From Phallusia mammillata (Eukaryota): DNA of 64,000 bases. The stretch lies in contig OZ281495.1 in the NCBI GenBank assembly GCA_965637545.1, forward strand, positions 28,334,001 to 28,398,000, read 5' to 3'. The notes under the pieces are model-generated. The model saw only the letters and a list, made by a program, of their open reading frames with translations. It was not told the DNA's origin and searched no databases. Every line of letters begins with the position of its first letter. Position 1 is the stretch's first letter. Below are positions 1-7,835 of the stretch, one piece after another. Position numbers and translations under genes: made by a program.

Positions 1-3000
1 AGTATTACAAGTGTATGTGACAACATTCTTGGATATTGGAGTGTAGGGTCCAGAACTTGGTGTAAAACTGGCCATGTTGATAATGCTGGAAGGATTTGGA
101 CAAACTTCAAACAACAAGTATAAAAGAATTTATTTCAGTTTGATATTTTTTTTTTGATTTACAATGTAAAAGTATGTATCAATTTCTACCATCCAAATAC
201 ACACCAATCTTTTGACATTGAGGGCTATTTGTCCATTCTCCACTGTCCTGGCAAGTTATTGTGGCAGATCCAACAATTTTAAACCCAGCGTTACAAGTGT
301 ATGTGACAACATTCTTGGATATTGGAGTGTAGGGTCCAGAACCTGGTGTAAAACTGGCCATGTTGCCAATGTTAGAAGGATTTGGACAAACTGAAATGAG
401 GAAGTTGATATTGTTGCTTGATACTGGGATTGATTTTTGAACCTGTAGAATATTTGTTTAAAGCTTTTTTACATACCAATTTGTTCACATTGTGGGCTAG
501 TTGACCATCTTCCAGTGTTTTGACATGTTATTGTAGCAGAACCAACAATTTTGTACCCAGTATTACAAGTGTATGTGACAACATTCTTGGATATTGGAGT
601 GTAGGGTCCAGAACTTGGTGAAAAACTTTCCATGTAGCTGATGCTGGAAGGATTTGGACAAACTTCAAACAACAAGTATAAAAGAATTTATTTCAGTTTG
701 ATATTTTAGTTTGCAATGTAAAAGTATGTATCTAATTCTATCATCCAAATACACACCAATCTTTTGACATTGAGGGCTATTTGTCCATTCTCCACTGTCC
801 TGGCAAGTTATTGTGGCAGATCCAACAATTTTATACCCAGCGTTACAAGTGTATGTAACAACATTCTTGGATATTGGAGTGTAGGGTCCAGAACCTGGTG
901 TAAAACTGGCCATGTTGCTAATGCTGGAAGGATTTGGACAAACTGGAATGTGGAAGTTGATATTGTTGCTTGATACTGGGATTGATTTTTGAACCTGTAG
1001 AATATTTGTTTAAAGCTTTTTTACATACCAATTTGTTCACATTGTGGGCTAGTTGACCATCTTCCAGTGTTTTGACAAGTTATTGTGGCAGATCCATCAA
1101 TTTTGTACCCAGCATCACAAGTGTATGTGACAACATTGTTGGTTATTGGAGTGTATGGTACAGAACTTGGTGTGAAACTTGCCATGTTGCTTATGCTGGA
1201 AGGATTTGGACAAACTAAAAAAATATAGCATTTTATGTGTTTGCTATTATTATTTACAAATATACCAGCAAAATTGCAATATGTTTCTTTATGTATGCAC
1301 CTATATGTTGGCATTGAGGGCTAGCTGTCCATCTCCCAGTGTTTTGACAAGTTATTGTAGCAGACCCATCAATTTTATACCCAGCATTACAAGTGTATGT
1401 GACAACATTGTTGGATATTGGAGTGTATGGTCCAGAACTTGGAGTAAAATTTGCCATGTTGCTAATGCTGGAAGGATTTGGACACACTGAAATGAAGAAA
1501 GTTATATTGTTGTTTGCTATTGCAATTTGTTTTTGAGCCTGTTTAATGTTAATGTAAAACTTTTTTGCACATACCAATCTGTTCACATTGTGGATTAGCT
1601 GTCCATCTTCCAGTGTTTTGACATGTTATTGTAGCAGAACCAACAATTTTGTACCCAGTATTACAAGTGTATGTGACAACATTCTTGGATATTGGAGTGT
1701 AGGGTCCAGAACTTGGTGAAAAACTTTCCATGTAGCTGATGCTGGAAGGATTTGGACAAACTTCAAACAACAAGTATAAAAGAATTTATTTCAGTTTAAT
1801 ATTTTAATTTGCAAAGTAAAAGTATGTATCAGGTTCTACCATTAAAATACACACCAATCTTTTGACATTGAGGGCTATTTGTCCATTCTCCACTGTCCTG
1901 GCAAGTTATTGTGGCAGATCCAACAATTTTATACCCAGCGTTACAAGTGTATGTGACTACATTCTTGGATATTGGAGTGTAGGGTCCAGAACCTGGTGTA
2001 ACACTGGCCATGTTGCCAATGTTAGAAGGATTTGGACAAACTGAAATGAGGAAGTTGATATTGTTGCTGGATACTGGGATTGATTTTTGAACCTGTAGAA
2101 TATTTGTTTAAAGCTTTTTTACATACCAATTTGTTCACATTGTGGGCTAGTTGACCATCTTCCAGTGTTTTGACAAGTTATTGTGGCAGATCCATCAATT
2201 TTGTACCCAGCATCACAAGTGTATGTGACAACATTGTTGGTTATTGGAGTGTATGGTCCAGAACTTGGTGTGAAACTTGCCATGTTGCTTATGCTGGAAG
2301 GATTTGGACAAACTAAAAAAATATAGCATTTTATGTGTTTACCATTATTATTTAGAAATATACCAGCAAAATTGTAATTTGTTTCTTTATGTATGCACCT
2401 ATCTGTTGGCATTGAGGGCTAGCTGTCCATCTCCCAGTGTTTTGACAAGTTATTGTAGCAGACCCATCAATTTTATACCCAGCATTACAAGTGTATGTGA
2501 CAACATTCTTGGATAGTGGAGTGTAGGGTCCAGAACTTGGTGCAAAACTTGCCATGTTGCTTATGCTGGAAGGATTTGGACATACTGAAATGAAGAAAGT
2601 GATGTTGTTGTTTGCTATTGCAATTTGTTTTTGAACCTGTTTAATGTTAATGTAAAACTTTTTGCACATACCAATCTGTTCACATTGTGGATTAGCTGTC
2701 CATCTTCCAGTGTTTTGACATGTTATTGTAGCAGATCCAACAATTTTGTACCCAGTATTACAAGTGTATGTGACAACATTCTTGGATATTGGAGTGTAGG
2801 GTCCAGAACTTGGTGAAAAACTTTCCATGTAGCTGATGCTGGAAGGATTTGGACAAACTTCAAACAACAAGTATAAAAGAATTTATTTCAGTTTGATATT
2901 TTAGTTTGCAATGTAAAAGTATGTATCTAATTCTATCATCCAAATACACACCAATCTTTTGACATTGAGGGCTATTTGTCCATTCTCCATTGTCCTGGCA

Positions 3001-4506
3001 AGTTATTGTGGCAGATCCAACAATTTTATACCCAGCGTTACAAGTGTATGTGACAACATTCTTGGATATTGGAGTGTAGGGTCCAGAACCTGGTGTAAAA
3101 CTGGCCATGTTGCCAATGTTAGAAGGATTTCGACAAACTGAAATGAGGAAGTTGATATTGTTGCTTGATACTGGGATTGATTTTTGAACCTGTAGAATAT
3201 TTGTTTAAAGCTTTTTTACATACCAATTTGTTCACATTGTGGGCTAGTTGACCATCTTCCAGTGTTTTGACAAGTTATTGTGGCAGATCCATCAATTTTG
3301 TACCCAGCATCACAAGTGTATGTGACAACATTGTTGGTTATTGGAGTGTATGGTCCAGAACTTGGTGTGAAACTTGCCATGTTGCTTATGCTGGAAGGAT
3401 TTGGACAAACTAAAAAAATATAGCATTTTATGTGTTTACCATTATTATTTAGAAATATACCAGCAAAATTGTAATTTGTTTCTTTATGTATGCACCTATC
3501 TGTTGGCATTGAGGGCTAGCTGTCCATCTCCCAGTGTTTTGACAAGTTATTGTAGCAGACCCATCAATTTTATACCCAGCATTACAAGTGTATGTGACAA
3601 CATTCTTGGATAGTGGAGTGTAGGGTCCAGAACTTGGTGCAAAACTTGCCATGTTGCTAATGCTGGAGGGATTTGGACATACTGAAATGAAGAAAGTGAT
3701 GTTGTTGTTTGCTATTGCAATTTGTTTTTGAACCTGTTTAATGTTAATGTAAAACTTTTTGCACATACCAATCTGTTCACATTGTGGATTAGCTGTCCAT
3801 CTTCCAGTGTTTTGACATGTTATTGTAGCAGAACCAACAATTTTGTACCCAGTATTACAAGTGTATGTGACAACATTCTTGGATATTGGAGTGTAGGGTC
3901 CAGAACTTGGTGAAAAACTTTCCATGTAGCTGATGCTGGAAGGATTTGGACAAACTTCAAACAACAAGTATAAAAGAATTTATTTCAGTTTGATATTTTA
4001 GTTTTCAATGTAAAAGTATGTATCTAATTCTATCATCCAAATACACACCAATCTTTTGACATTGAGGGCTATTTGTCCATTCTCCACTGTCCTGGCAAGT
4101 TATTGTGGCAGATCCAACAATTTTATACCCAGTATTACAAGTGTATGTGACAACATTCTTGGATATTGGAGTGTAGGGTCCAGAACTTGGTGTAAAACTG
4201 GCCATGTTGCTAATGCTAGAAGGATTTCGACAAACTGAAATGAGGAAGGTGATATTGTTGCTTGATGCTGGGATTGATTTTTAAACCTGTGGAATATTTG
4301 TTTAAAGCTTTTTTACATGCCAATTTGTTCACATTTTGGGCTAGTTGACCATCTTCCAGTGTTTTGACAATGTATTGTGGCAGATCCATCAATTTTATAG
4401 CCAGCATTGCAAGTGTATGCGACAGAATTTTTGGATATTGGAGTGTATGGTCCAGAACTTGGTGTGAAACTTGCCATGTTGCTTATGCGGGAAGGGTTTG
4501 GACAGA
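1..4506 (-). repeat. Tandem exon+intron array: ~272-280 bp monomers organised as a ~1097-bp four-exon higher-order repeat
   Basis: Homologous exon ends at 4049, 2952, 1855 and 757 (spacing 1097/1097/1098), then 205 (552). Introns of 86-100 bp are near-identical between periods. Confidence 0.95.
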
Positions 4507-7251
4507 CTGTGCAGAAAAATTTGTTGCTCGCCTAATTCATGGTATGAAACCAACTGTACAACATGACATGGCTAAAGTCCACATCCGAAGCGTTAAAACA
4601 TATTTTGCTAGGCAAGTTTTGGCACTATGGATTTGCAGAACTGTGTCAAAAAATTCGGTGTTTCCCAAAGTTGTGGGGCTGAAGCTGTTGTGGCTGCATG
4701 CGTTATTTTTGAAACTTACCAATTTGATCACATGTTGGAGCTGATGTCCACGTTCCACTTGCCTGGCAAGTAATTGTGCTTGATCCCTCTAATTTGTATC
4801 CAGTGGCACAAGTGTACCTGACCGTTGATCCGATAGCGTATGATCCAGAAACTGGTGTGTAGCCAGCCATGTTTGACACGCTTGTGGGCGTTCCACAGGT
4901 TGTGACTACCACTATCGTATAAAAAATGTATAGCCAGGTAAACGAAACGGGAAAAATGTTGTAGAGTCGTTTTTCGTAGTTGGGGTCGTACTTGATATTT
5001 CACACCTAATGCCAAAAGTTTATGTCAAATTTATAAATTAGGCCTTTTCAGTTAATGTAATAAACGGCAGTTGACGTTCCGTTTACCCGTTTGCTATTTT
5101 CACTTTTGGTTTAGTTGTCCTTTTTTCCTGGTGTTAGACCTGGCGTTCGTTTTCAGGGGTGTGCAGACCGCAGCCCGAGGACCAAAATTGTTCCGCTGGA
5201 AGGAAGTGGTGTGGCCCGCAAAGACGATTTTAAATAAAGTTTAGTTCGATAAACTGTTTTAACGTAGTGTTAACGAGCGATCCTTTTTTGTTTCAGATTC
5301 GATGAATGCGTCGGTGCCATTTTTGTACATTGAGTTGAGTTTGTTTCACAGGGTGAAAGAACAAATAGCGAATTAATTTTAATAAAGCTTTAAATACCGG
5401 CGCGCAATGTTGACATAGTGAATGACACAATTGGTGGATCACTAACAAACTCCCTACAGCTTTACTGTTTTGCTTTATGTGGCGGTAGGTCACCAGAATA
5501 TGATTAAAACATGACTGGTGTCTGGAAAATCATGCCGAAGTACGCACTGTACGGTGGTACACCACTCCACCGGAACCGCACCATCGTGCTGGTAATTAAT
5601 AAATGTGGACTAAACACTAAACGTTATTTTCGATCGTTTCCACTTGTGAACCATATTGCATCTTTGAAATTCACTGAAACTTGGGTGCCAATTTACAAAA
5701 TTCGAAATGCGGCTTTGCTTGCCATTGTTGATGACATCAGTACTTTATTTTGTGTTTTGTAGTGTGGCGAATTTTTAGCACTCCCACCTTCTTAAAAACT
5801 AGACATTAAACTAGAATTAGATTTAAGCCAACAAACTTTCTTTGAAGATTTTCATGTTTTACACCGTTACAAACGGAGCTGATGTGGCCGTAATGTCAAG
5901 TAGGTCTCAGCAGCATGAACTCGAAAATACGGTAGTCCGTTATTTTGACCCAAAAGTTTCGTAAAGCTCGAACATTTTTACGTCGGCAGACAGTTGCATT
6001 GTATTTGCCCTTCGCGATTTACGCAGCTACATCAGTTTTCGCATTCCTGTATTTTCATGGAAAATATTGTTTTTCATAATCTGATGATGCTAAGTGAGTG
6101 AACTTTTACGCATTATCCTCTTTCATCTGACATACAAACTGAATTCCCTTTTTATACCAGATTATATTACGCCGCAACAGCCAAGAGGTAGTGCTTATCA
6201 TATAGGGACTGTTCGTCACAGTGCCAAATTTAACTGAAAAACATGTTTCAGTGAAGTAGTTGGTTTTTTTAATTCCGTGGTTTTGTGCGCTTTGAATAAG
6301 AAACGCATTTTCGGATCAAATGCCTAAAAATGATGGTGGATAAACTAGCATTTTTAAGAAAACTATAAATTAGATTAGAATTAGAGCTTACTCGATAATT
6401 CTAAATTAGATTAGAACTATTGAATTACCGCCATTTTGCTCTAATTTGCCCAACTAGACAACTAGAATTATCTAGTTGTCCAAGTCTGTATTAATGTACA
6501 ACACATAGACTTTGGAATCTTGATATTCTATACGCAGCTTTATTACTACGAACCATCTGCTTTTGAACATGGTTATGGTGTATAACGCTTACCTCTCTGG
6601 CATGAAGGTGCACGTGTCCAGGTTCCTGATGCCGTGCACGTAATTGTCGCAGATCCCGATATTTTGTAACCAGCAGCACAGTAGTAAGTCACAGCACTTC
6701 CCGAATCATACGGACCAGACGACGGGACAACTCTTGCCACGTTTGCAACATGCGGAGGATTGTCGCATCCTGCGAAAAAAGGTTGTTATTTTTCGACGCA
6801 CAAATCTTTTTTTTAAATCGTGTTTTTTTCCAGGGTTTTGATCGACAATTTAATATTATGTGGTCGTGGACAAAATGTTGGCTGTGTAATTAGGTATATA
6901 TGTGTCGCTAAGAACCCCCAACATCCGAGACTACACGCAATATACAAGTTTCTACTGCAAAAAATATAAAGTATACAACTGTTCGTACCTTCAGTCGGCC
7001 TACAATCGCCAGCTCTAATGCCCACTGGACAGATAGGCCCTTCACCCAATGCTGAAAAAAATATGTAAAAAAAATCATGAACATAAAATAAGAGGGTAAA
7101 TAATCAAACAGTTAAACATCATGCAGACGATCGTGATTTTTAGTTGCATTTAATACAACCATTTAATTGATTTGTTAAGGACATTACACTTACCACCCTC
7201 TAAGTTTCCCAACAAAACCAAAAACATAATCGTACCCAACACTACTTCCAT
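1..7251 (-). CDS. Secreted or membrane multi-Sushi (CCP/SCR) domain protein, 3' part beyond the left edge; at least 19 CCP domains
   Basis: Exons in transcript order: 7251-7194 (MEVVLGTIMFLVLLGNLEG, signal-peptide-like, gtaagt donor); 7051-6989 (ALGEGPICPVGIRAGDCRPTE); 6769-6593 (CCP, GCDNPPH...YYCAAGYKISGSATITCTASGTWTRAPSCQR); 4911-4720 (CCP); sixteen 186-bp CCP exons at 4506-4321, 4234-4049, 3954-3769, 3681-3496, 3409-3224, 3137-2952, 2857-2672, 2584-2399, 2312-2127, 2040-1855, 1760-1575, 1486-1301, 1214-1029, 942-757, 662-477, 390-205; and a partial exon 104-1. All are phase 1-1 and frame-continuous, with the CCP consensus C-x-x-P...Y-x-C-x-x-GY...G...C...G-x-W...P-x-C. Confidence 0.92.
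5154..5220. mobile_element. Truncated hAT-type MITE end
   Basis: Begins CAGGGGTGTGCAGAC, resembling other CAG-terminal MITE ends in the window; no matching right TIR found. Confidence 0.3.
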
Positions 7252-7835
7252 CGCAGACGGCTGCACATACGTCACTAATGAAAACTGCGCAATGCTTAGA
7301 AATATAAAATGTAGAAAACCCACGAATTGTGGAAACCTGTGTCCGTTTGCATGTAGTTTCCTGTATGTCTAACAGCATAGCAAGCAGTGTTTAATGTACC
7401 AAAAAATGTTGGATGTCGGTATAGCTCACTTTAAGTCACTTCCTAAATTATTAACAGCAGGATAGTGTGGTGTGTTTAAACAAGAAACCCACATTTGAGG
7501 AAATCTGTAACCCACCGCTTAACGCTTCCTACATTTTTTGGTTAGGTTGATCCAACAGGTTCTATGTTTGGTTATCTATAGCTAAGAGCGCTTATGGACG
7601 GTGACACAATTAACACTTGGCTCAAAGAGGTTTTATTGATCCAACATTTTTGTTTTACAAATAAGTTAGAAAAAGACAATTCGTGTTTGTTACACTTGTT
7701 TGTTTTGCTTTTTTACAAAGCAATTTGAGCAATGCAACAACACATCTTCATCAAAAACGCAGTTCGGGCAAAATATTGACACAACTCATGCGCTTGGGCT
7801 GCTGGTTTTGTGATAGGACTTAAAATCCTATAGAC

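What the first reader, a model, noticed from the sequence alone, without database searches (positions are those of the whole stretch)
1..7251. Signal-peptide gene built from at least 19 one-exon-one-domain Sushi modules: candidate variable recognition or complement-type receptor
Seen: a signal-peptide exon, a short two-Cys exon, two divergent CCP exons, then 17 or more highly similar 186-bp CCP exons, all phase 1-1, so any exon can be skipped, gained or lost in frame. Established: long CCP arrays typify complement regulators (CR1, factor H). Ascidian variable or allorecognition-linked genes also use CCP domains (Ciona vCRL1, Botryllus fester). Inference: a lineage-specific, length-variable surface or secreted protein that may act in immunity, self/non-self recognition or gamete interaction. 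The C-terminus lies outside the window, so membrane anchoring is unknown.
Basis: partly seen in the sequence, partly recalled or inferred. Interest (0 to 1): 0.7.

Follow-up and report, generated by a model that had tools for sequence, protein, structure and literature searches.

The report
Sushi-exon array beside adhesion-GPCR genes
The stretch really is the front part of a sea-squirt gene built from 22 near-identical Sushi-domain exons, but it lies in a row of adhesion-type G-protein-coupled receptor genes with very long Sushi or EGF stalks, so it is probably the outer rod of such a receptor, or a split-off copy of one, and not a complement-type receptor.

Summary
Observation confirmed. On the minus strand lie a signal-peptide exon, a two-Cys exon, two divergent Sushi (CCP) exons and then 186-bp phase 1-1 CCP exons. 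The gene (D) has 22 intact CCP exons; three and a half lie left of the window, followed by one frameshifted and one truncated copy. A 1,097-bp four-exon repeat is 96-99% identical between copies. Exons are better conserved than introns, and a D-specific 79-mer occurs in four probable RNA runs.

The interpretation changes. This CCP type occurs only in four same-strand arrays within about 100 kb. Arrays A, B and C run straight into GAIN/GPS plus seven-transmembrane exons of adhesion GPCRs. B has 79 CCP exons.

D differs:
- About 5 kb downstream sits a second promoter and signal-peptide exon.
- Then come Ser/Thr mini-exons and one 11,406-bp exon of about 93 calcium-binding EGF domains.
- Then come GAIN, GPS (HL|T) and 7TM exons (gene E).

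A Ciona protein has the same order in one chain: Sushi, EGF, GAIN, 7TM. Whether D splices into E is unresolved. My estimates: about 50% that it does, about 25% that D is a secreted CCP-only protein, about 15% that it is a decaying remnant. No evidence points to complement or allorecognition. The scan had not noted this cluster before.

The parts
7194..7251 (-). Exon 1 of gene D: start codon and signal peptide (MEVVLGTIMFLVLLGNLEG), ending in phase 1
   Evidence: Read directly. The donor is G|GTAAGT. The exon and about 150 bp upstream align with the first exons of gene E and gene A.
6989..7051 (-). Exon 2: 63-bp two-Cys mini-exon (LGEGPICPVGIRAGDCRPTE), phase 1-1
   Evidence: No Pfam family matched. 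Genes A and B have analogous small Cys exons.
6593..6769 (-). CCP1: divergent Sushi exon, 177 bp, phase 1-1
   Evidence: Pfam Sushi E 2.6e-13. About 68% nucleotide identity to CCP1 of genes A and B.
4720..4911 (-). CCP2: divergent Sushi exon, 192 bp, phase 1-1, with a 4-residue linker before the first Cys
   Evidence: Pfam Sushi E 1.6e-15. Splice sites were read.
4321..4506 (-). E03: first 186-bp array exon; the only one with a GC donor
   Evidence: Pfam Sushi E 1.8e-12.
1..4234 (-). Array exons E04-E19: 15 complete 186-bp Sushi exons plus the in-window 104 bp of E19, separated by 85-100-bp introns. Exon types a-b-c-d form a 1,097-bp higher-order repeat.
   Evidence: Exon positions are 4049-4234, 3769-3954, 3496-3681, 3224-3409, 2952-3137, 2672-2857, 2399-2584, 2127-2312, 1855-2040, 1575-1760, 1301-1486, 1029-1214, 757-942, 477-662, 205-390 and 1-104.
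943..4234 (-). Three full copies of the four-exon higher-order repeat (4234-3138, 3137-2041, 2040-943)
   Evidence: The copies are 96.4-99.0% identical over 1,097 bp, introns included. In the older pairs exons differ by 2.0-2.4% and introns by 5.9% (Fisher p 0.002-0.005).

Best explanation
Gene D, the window's gene, is the N-terminal, ligand-facing part of a member of a lineage-specific family of adhesion GPCRs (GPR128/ADGRG7-like) in a sea squirt, probably Phallusia mammillata. In this family the ectodomain is a long rod of tandemly amplified one-exon Sushi domains.

Sequence shows directly:
- Four same-strand arrays of this CCP type lie in about 100 kb.
- Arrays A (15 CCP), B (79 CCP) and C (11 CCP) are followed in frame by a post-array exon, GAIN, GPS and 7TM exons.
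- D has a promoter, a signal peptide, a two-Cys exon and 22 intact CCP exons, but no terminal exon of its own.
- Gene E lies 5 kb downstream on the same strand. It has a homologous promoter and signal-peptide exon, 11-14 Ser/Thr mini-exons, about 93 calcium-binding EGF domains in one 11.4-kb exon plus one in its own exon, then GAIN, GPS (CNHL|TNFALL) and 7TM.
- Every one of these exons is phase 1-1.

Inferred:
- Transcripts from D's promoter skip E's first exon, which has no acceptor, and splice from the last good CCP exon into E's mini-exons.
- The product would be a receptor of roughly 6,000 residues: signal peptide, 22 CCP, glycosylated stalk, about 94 EGF, GAIN, 7TM. E's own promoter would give a form without CCP domains.
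- As in other adhesion GPCRs, the GAIN domain would cut itself at HL|T. The long rod would bind a partner and transmit pulling force, and its removal would expose the tethered agonist that switches on G-protein signalling.
- Unequal crossing-over between near-identical exon blocks lengthens or shortens the rod.
For: - CCP exons, phases and Pfam Sushi.
- More than 125 exons of this CCP type, all within C2:28.238-28.341 Mb on the minus strand; elsewhere in the genome the best match is 49% identical.
- Conserved GAIN/GPS/7TM exon sets after arrays A, B and C and at window -25,723 to -32,031.
- Pfam GPS 2e-13 and 7tm_2 1e-10 on E's exons. The solved structures matching the TM2-3 exon are all adhesion GPCRs.
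- E's TM2-3 exon is closest to A, B and C (75-83% identity); the next paralogues are at 71-75% and lower.
- B's last CCP exon and its post-array exon share phase 1.
- Ciona intestinalis LOC100184723 carries signal peptide, 8 Sushi, EGF, SEA-like region, Sushi, GAIN/GPS and 7tm_2 in one chain. It gives the best summed match to E's exons among the 12 relatives tested.
- An amphioxus relative has VWA, EGF, at least 9 Sushi, GPR128_N, GAIN and 7TM.
- D looks alive. All 22 exons are intact, dN/dS between exon types is 0.2-0.5, and exons are 2.5-3 times better conserved than introns between repeat copies.
- A 79-nt exact contig found only in D is present in all four probable RNA runs, while the introns are empty.
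- Those runs hold 19-23% of the words of window 4300-7300, which matches the exon share of that stretch.
- No contig lies on the 3.9 kb downstream of the last good exon, apart from SINEs. So no nearby terminal exon or 3' UTR was seen.
Against: - No read or contig joins a D exon to an E exon. The RNA contigs on the array are only 36-79 nt long and show no exon-exon joint.
- E has its own intact first exon and a promoter-like region homologous to those of D and A, so E can stand alone.
- D's array ends in a frameshifted copy (187 bp, in-frame stop) and a truncated copy. This is what the edge of a partial duplication or a deletion would look like.
- The empty stretch downstream of D proves little, because the tool filters records.
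- The runs are only guessed to be RNA.
- No gene model or cDNA of D or E exists in the protein collections searched.
Confidence: 0.5

Rival explanations
1. D is a stand-alone gene for a secreted rod of 22 Sushi domains. It would be a 5' derivative of a CCP-array adhesion GPCR that lost its GAIN/7TM part. Translation would end either just after the last good exon (reading into the intron gives ...QQIGEYKK, then a stop) or in the frameshifted copy (...SISKKCYHVHL, then a stop). Such a protein could act as a soluble binder or a decoy for the ligands of its receptor paralogues.
For: - E has its own promoter and signal-peptide exon between D and the rest.
- In-frame stops are available right after the last intact exon.
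- An AATAAA lies near window -1,600.
- D's exons are under constraint and are transcribed.
Against: - No contig from the four runs covers the frameshifted copy, the truncated copy or the 3.9 kb downstream. A 3' UTR would lie there and, being unique sequence, should assemble well.
- No short CCP-only protein like it was found in the protein collections.
Confidence: 0.25
2. D is a young, decaying 5' remnant, transcribed or not, left by a partial duplication or deletion in a very unstable cluster. It makes no functional protein.
For: - There are decayed copies at the 3' edge and no terminal exon.
- The cluster holds other partial duplicates. One is a second 7TM fragment after gene B at window -82,701 to -84,656. 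Array C has one exon with a stop and another with a lost Cys.
- Much of D's intactness could simply reflect how young the repeats are (96-99% identity).
Against: - All 22 exons keep their frame, cysteines and splice sites.
- Exons are significantly better conserved than introns since the repeat duplications.
- dN/dS is below 1 between exon types.
- D-specific exon sequence, but no intron sequence, is present in four probable RNA runs.
Confidence: 0.15
3. One reading: a complement-regulator-like or allorecognition/gamete-recognition receptor of the CR1, factor H, vCRL1 or fester kind, whose variable number of CCP modules provides individual-specific recognition.
For: - It has a long CCP-only N-terminal array with a signal peptide.
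- The best solved-structure matches of a single exon are CR1, factor H and CR2. This is generic for any Sushi domain.
- The repeat architecture favours length polymorphism.
Against: - Its closest relatives by sequence and position are ectodomains of adhesion GPCRs.
- Exon copies are conserved, not hypervariable.
- No single-pass TM or GPI exon follows the array.
- No polymorphism or expression data tie it to immunity or gametes.
Confidence: 0.07

Closest known systems
Ciona intestinalis LOC100184723 (XP_018671422.1 and isoforms; RefSeq 'uncharacterized protein'), a Sushi-bearing GPR128/ADGRG7-like adhesion GPCR
   Same: - It has the same domain order as D followed by E: signal peptide, Sushi array, EGF, SEA-like region, GAIN/GPS with HL|T, then 7tm_2.
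- It gives the best summed match to E's GAIN/7TM exons among the 12 relatives compared.
- Its CCPs are 48-55% identical to D's over the C-terminal half of the domain.
- One predicted isoform lacks three CCPs.
   Different: - It has 8+1 Sushi domains and a single EGF in about 1,400 residues on one transcription unit.
- Here there are 22 Sushi (79 in paralogue B) and about 94 EGF domains.
- There is an extra promoter and signal-peptide exon between the Sushi part and the EGF part.
- One-to-one orthology is not shown.
Vertebrate adhesion GPCRs with repeat stalks (ADGRE1/EMR1 and ADGRE5/CD97 with EGF repeats; ADGRG7/GPR128)
   Same: GPS/GAIN autoproteolysis motif, class B2 7TM and a calcium-binding EGF stalk. 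NCBI names the ascidian relatives 'ADGRG7/G2/G4-like'.
   Different: - As far as I know, vertebrate adhesion GPCRs have no Sushi arrays (my own knowledge).
- From my own knowledge, ADGRE receptors carry only a handful of EGF domains (about 3-7), not about 94.
- The repertoire and classification papers read here mention no Sushi/CCP N-termini: PMC2396169, PMC2246102, PMC6900090.
Regulators of complement activation (CR1, factor H, CR2)
   Same: They have long tandem CCP arrays, and CR1 has higher-order repeats that vary in copy number by unequal crossing-over (established knowledge). Single D exons match these proteins best among solved structures.
   Different: There is no shared ancestry beyond the domain. 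D's relatives are GPCR ectodomains. CR1 ends in a single TM helix and factor H is secreted. No complement-related function is indicated.
Other giant repeat-stalk adhesion GPCRs noted by this scan in the same genome (s1-380863, 69 EGF modules; s1-382260, lectin-EGF(n) cluster at C2:21.7 Mb)
   Same: They show the same theme of an adhesion GPCR with an amplified one-domain stalk. The 21.7-Mb cluster appears as 39-51% identical 7TM matches.
   Different: Those have EGF, CUB or lectin ectodomains. This cluster is the only place in the genome with this CCP type, and it combines CCP and EGF arrays at one locus.

Membership tests
Sushi/CCP/SCR domain (Pfam PF00084) | Module of about 60 residues with four conserved Cys and a conserved Trp, scoring above the Pfam gathering threshold | tested here: met
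   Four exons score 46.8-57.6 bits against a cut-off of 20.7. All 22 intact exons keep C...C...C...W...C.
Adhesion GPCR (class B2) | GPS motif within a GAIN domain, with the cleavage consensus H-L|T/S | tested here: met
   Met for the downstream gene E, not for D itself. Pfam GPS E 2.1e-13 on L005:9567-9710(-), with the sequence ...VCKCNHLTNFALLVVS. Genes B and C read CDHLTSFALLVVS in the homologous exon. Pfam GAIN itself did not score on single exons.
Adhesion GPCR (class B2) | Secretin-type seven-transmembrane domain (Pfam 7tm_2) after the GPS | tested here: met
   Met for gene E. 7tm_2 E 1.1e-10 (TM2-3 exon) and 1.3e-3 (TM6 exon). All 17 solved-structure matches are adhesion GPCRs. Homologous exon sets follow arrays A, B and C.
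Adhesion GPCR (class B2) | Ectodomain repeats and GAIN/7TM on one polypeptide | tested here: inconclusive
   - For A, B and C, adjacency (170-340 bp) and matching phase support one gene, but no transcript was seen.
- For D, the array and the GAIN/7TM exons are 24.5 kb apart, with E's own first exon in between.
- No exon-exon joint was recovered.
Regulators of complement activation (CR1, factor H type) | CCP-only protein related by descent to RCA genes, ending in a single TM, a GPI anchor or secretion, and binding C3b/C4b | tested here: not met
   The nearest relatives of D's CCPs are the arrays of adhesion GPCR genes in the same cluster. Similarity to CR1 and factor H is at the generic domain level. 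No TM or GPI exon follows the array. Binding cannot be tested here.
SVEP1 / CSMD | CCP domains interleaved with CUB, VWA, EGF, HYR or pentraxin domains, with one-to-one orthology across animals | tested here: not met
   D holds only CCP exons. The CCP type is confined to one 100-kb cluster, so it is lineage-specific.
Ascidian variable CCP receptors (Ciona vCRL1, Botryllus fester) | Highly polymorphic or alternatively spliced CCP-bearing single-pass membrane protein expressed in follicle cells or at the fusion zone | not tested
Intra-array variation is low.

The most novel reading that the evidence does not exclude
D and E are a receptor caught in the middle of exon shuffling. Two tandem, independently promoted units would be joined by read-through splicing, made possible because every exon is phase 1-1. 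The result would be a giant adhesion GPCR carrying both a 22-Sushi array and a roughly 94-EGF array. The number of Sushi modules would differ between individuals through ongoing unequal crossing-over, and this cluster (15, 79, 11 and 22 CCP) would tune reach or partner choice. In a broadcast-spawning, self-sterile sea squirt that could serve cell-cell or gamete recognition.
Probability: 0.15. Interest if true: 0.75.

Novelty: new variant of a known kind. Interest (0 to 1): 0.5.

Why it matters
Adhesion GPCRs are thought to sense pulling force through their long outer parts, but how stalk length matters is an open question. This locus offers natural paralogues that share one receptor core and carry stalks of 11, 15, 22 and 79 Sushi domains or about 94 EGF domains. 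The repeat blocks are so young (96-99% identical) that length is probably still changing.

A 79-Sushi receptor would be among the longest Sushi arrays I know of. From my own knowledge, CR1 has about 30-44 and SVEP1 has 34.

The repertoire papers I read describe no Sushi-bearing adhesion GPCRs in chordates. Yet database models from Ciona and amphioxus show the layout is old.

For genome annotation, the D/E pair is a warning. An all-phase-1 locus with an internal promoter can be modelled as one gene or as two.

Tried and rejected
1. RNA evidence for the D-to-E junction. It gave only 36-79-nt contigs on CCP exons and no exon-exon joint. Several contigs on the last exon (E22) also occur in gene B, so only the 79-mer at -16..62 counts as D-specific.

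2. Word searches for a same-species gene model or cDNA.
- The EGF open frame found only generic calcium-binding EGF proteins, at most 61% identical.
- The E22 frame found no candidate.
- A two-CCP frame found nothing at E <= 1e-8.

3. The full HMMER search with E's TM2-3 exon found nothing above 63% identity. It gave relatives, but no model of this locus.

4. Pfam on the post-array exon and the GAIN pieces taken singly gave no family. BLASTP of that exon against the Ciona protein was not significant. 'SEA-like' is therefore only a guess, based on position and on the Ciona protein.

5. I looked for an upstream exon supplying the first Cys of the first EGF and found none. The giant exon starts in mid-domain.

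6. I looked for a first exon of array C. There was only a weak B-like match at about -33,700.

7. I considered that all four arrays might be one mega-gene. I rejected this because A and B have their own signal-peptide exons and each array has its own 7TM set.


Full report
**Position.** The window is G000:C2:28,334,001-28,398,000 of a 240-Mb assembly. Negative coordinates below count leftwards from the window start; the genome position is 28,334,000 plus the coordinate. The organism is probably the sea squirt Phallusia mammillata. An earlier scan note says so. A P. mammillata cDNA protein (CAB3220085.1) matches a paralogous cluster on this chromosome, with some exons 98-100% identical.

**Checking the observation.**
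- Exon 1 (7251-7194) encodes MEVVLGTIMFLVLLGNLEG and ends G|GTAAGT.
- Exon 2 (7051-6989) is a 63-bp two-Cys mini-exon.
- CCP1 (6769-6593, 177 bp) and CCP2 (4911-4720, 192 bp) are divergent Sushi exons.
- From 4506 down to the window edge lie 16 complete 186-bp exons and part of a seventeenth, separated by 85-100-bp introns.
- Every exon begins with two bases and ends with one base of a split codon, so all are phase 1-1. All have AG acceptors, and all have GT donors except one GC donor.
- Pfam Sushi scores E 1e-12 to 1e-15 per exon.

The array has four exon types (a-b-c-d) forming a 1,097-bp higher-order repeat. Its copies are 96.4-99.0% identical, introns included.

**Extending left.** I fetched 120 kb to the left of the window.
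- The array continues for three more intact exons. Gene D therefore has 22 intact CCP exons.
- It then decays into a 187-bp copy with a +1 frameshift in an A7 run and an in-frame stop, and then a truncated copy.
- A genome-wide search with one exon found more than 125 exons of this type. All lie on the minus strand between C2:28,238,667 and 28,340,767. The best match elsewhere is 49% identical.
- They form four arrays: A (15 CCP), B (79 CCP, of which 77 are 186-bp exons), C (11 CCP; one with a stop, another with a lost Cys) and D.

**What follows the arrays.**
- BLASTN and TBLASTX between the regions downstream of the arrays found a conserved set of about 16 exon-like pieces directly after A, B and C.
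- A more diverged but complete set lies at -25,723 to -32,031 downstream of D.
- On the latter set, Pfam finds GPS (2.1e-13...CKCNHL|TNFALLVVS) and 7tm_2 (1.1e-10).
- The solved structures matching the TM2-3 exon are all adhesion GPCRs.
- In B, the last CCP exon and the next exon share phase 1 and lie 340 bp apart.
- B also has its own signal-peptide exon, a small Cys exon, CCP1 and CCP2.

Genes A and B therefore read as complete adhesion GPCRs with Sushi-array ectodomains. Array C has the 3' receptor exons, but I could not identify its first exon.

**The region between D's array and the fourth GAIN/7TM set.** It holds three things.
- At -6,508 to -6,568 there is a second first exon (MAHIFAPLVLFVLLLGNFEI, donor G|GTAAGT). 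It and about 150 bp upstream align with the first exons and upstream regions of D and A.
- From -8,528 to -13,287 there are 11-14 mini-exons of 42 or 51 bp. All are phase 1-1, have good splice sites and encode Ser/Thr-rich peptides such as TESTEGSGQTETM.
- From -13,870 to -25,275 there is one 11,406-bp exon. It is an open frame of 3,801 codons with 559 Cys, about 93 tandem 41-residue calcium-binding EGF domains and 243 N-glycosylation sequons. One more EGF exon follows.

I call the unit that starts at -6,508 gene E. Its TM2-3 exon is 75-83% identical to those of A, B and C; the next paralogues are at 71-75% and lower. E therefore belongs to the same receptor clade.

**Relatives elsewhere.** A full HMMER search with E's TM2-3 exon found nothing above 63% identity.
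- Ciona intestinalis LOC100184723 has signal peptide, 8 Sushi, EGF, SEA-like region, Sushi, GAIN/GPS and 7tm_2 in about 1,400 residues. It gives the best summed match to E's exons among the 12 relatives compared. Its CCPs are 48-55% identical to D's over half a domain.
- A Branchiostoma belcheri protein has VWA, EGF, at least 9 Sushi, GPR128_N, GAIN and 7TM. Styela and Clavelina relatives carry fn3 or EGF stalks.

The layout of a Sushi array on a GPR128-like adhesion GPCR is thus old in invertebrate chordates but exists only as unnamed database models. The Ciona and amphioxus GPCR repertoire papers and the 2019 classification paper contain no mention of Sushi or CCP.

**Is D alive, and where does it end?**
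- dN/dS between exon types is 0.2-0.5.
- Between the older higher-order repeat copies, exons differ by 2.0-2.4% and introns by 5.9% (p 0.002-0.005).
- Four runs of the same organism, guessed to be RNA, hold 19-23% of the words of window 4300-7300. That is about the exon share of the stretch.
- Laid on -4,799..1,200, these runs cover only CCP exons and two tRNA-derived SINEs, never the introns.
- A 79-nt exact contig present in all four runs occurs only in D.
- Nothing lies on the frameshifted copy, the truncated copy or the 3.9 kb beyond.

D's exons therefore seem to be transcribed and spliced, and no nearby terminal exon was seen. The contigs are too short to show any exon-exon joint, however, and an empty stretch is weak evidence.

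**Reading.**
- With high confidence (about 0.9), D derives from and belongs to this Sushi-array adhesion GPCR family. It is not a complement regulator and not an SVEP1 or CSMD orthologue.
- What D makes today is open.
- I favour (about 0.5) splicing from the last good CCP exon into E's second exon onward. Three things support this: D has no terminal exon, all exons are phase 1-1, and the resulting order (Sushi, EGF, GAIN, 7TM) is that of the Ciona protein.
- The rivals are a secreted CCP-only protein (about 0.25) and a decaying remnant (about 0.15).
- The mechanism is inferred from what is established for adhesion GPCRs. It comprises self-cleavage at HL|T, force on the long glycosylated rod and exposure of the tethered agonist. 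It was not tested.

All searches were done exon by exon or on natural open frames.

Noticed in passing
left of the window, G000:C2:28,308,725-28,320,130 (window -25,275 to -13,870), minus strand: A single 11,406-bp phase 1-1 exon encodes about 93 tandem 41-residue calcium-binding EGF domains (123-bp period, 243 N-glycosylation sequons). The first repeat lacks its first Cys.
   Followed up: partly
G000:C2:28,259,842-28,284,892 (window -74,158 to -49,109), minus strand: Gene B has a signal-peptide exon, a small Cys exon and 79 Sushi exons with a seven-exon (1,971-bp) higher-order repeat, running in phase into GAIN/GPS/7TM exons. It may be one of the longest Sushi arrays known.
   Followed up: partly
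G000:C2:28,249,344-28,251,299 (window -84,656 to -82,701): A partial second copy of the 7TM exons (TM2-3 to TM7) lies between genes B and A. This is evidence of segmental duplication inside the cluster.
   Followed up: no
window 7481 and 9308, minus strand: Two copies of a roughly 70-bp motif (…TTTCC.CAA.TGT.GGTTTCTTGTTTAAACAC…) lie upstream of gene D. The motif is related to the promoter-proximal sequence of genes D, E and A. They fall inside the palindrome noted as s1-364073, so that palindrome may be made of duplicated promoter segments.
   Followed up: partly
window 5790-6490 (intron between CCP1 and CCP2): An interspersed repeat with more than 60 copies, 75-89% identical, on seven of the large contigs (C1-C7).
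   Followed up: no
L016:111-296 and 1972-2230 (window about -4,689 to -4,504 and -2,828 to -2,570): tRNA-derived SINE-like elements (…GGTGGGATTCGAACCCACGAC…) have very high contig depth in the four probable RNA runs.
   Followed up: no
L016:2230 joined to 3955 (window -2,570 to -845): One low-depth contig in run X9 skips 1,724 bases with GT..AG ends on the plus strand. It starts beside a SINE and lands inside CCP exon E22. It could be an antisense spliced transcript or an assembly chimera.
   Followed up: no
G000:C2:32.90-33.11 Mb, minus strand: At least 13 tandem ADGRG7-like receptor genes are matched by the Phallusia mammillata cDNA protein CAB3220085.1 at 73-100% identity per exon. Two closer relatives of gene E lie at C2:30.67-30.70 Mb (73-75%). 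I did not examine the N-termini of any of these.
   Followed up: no
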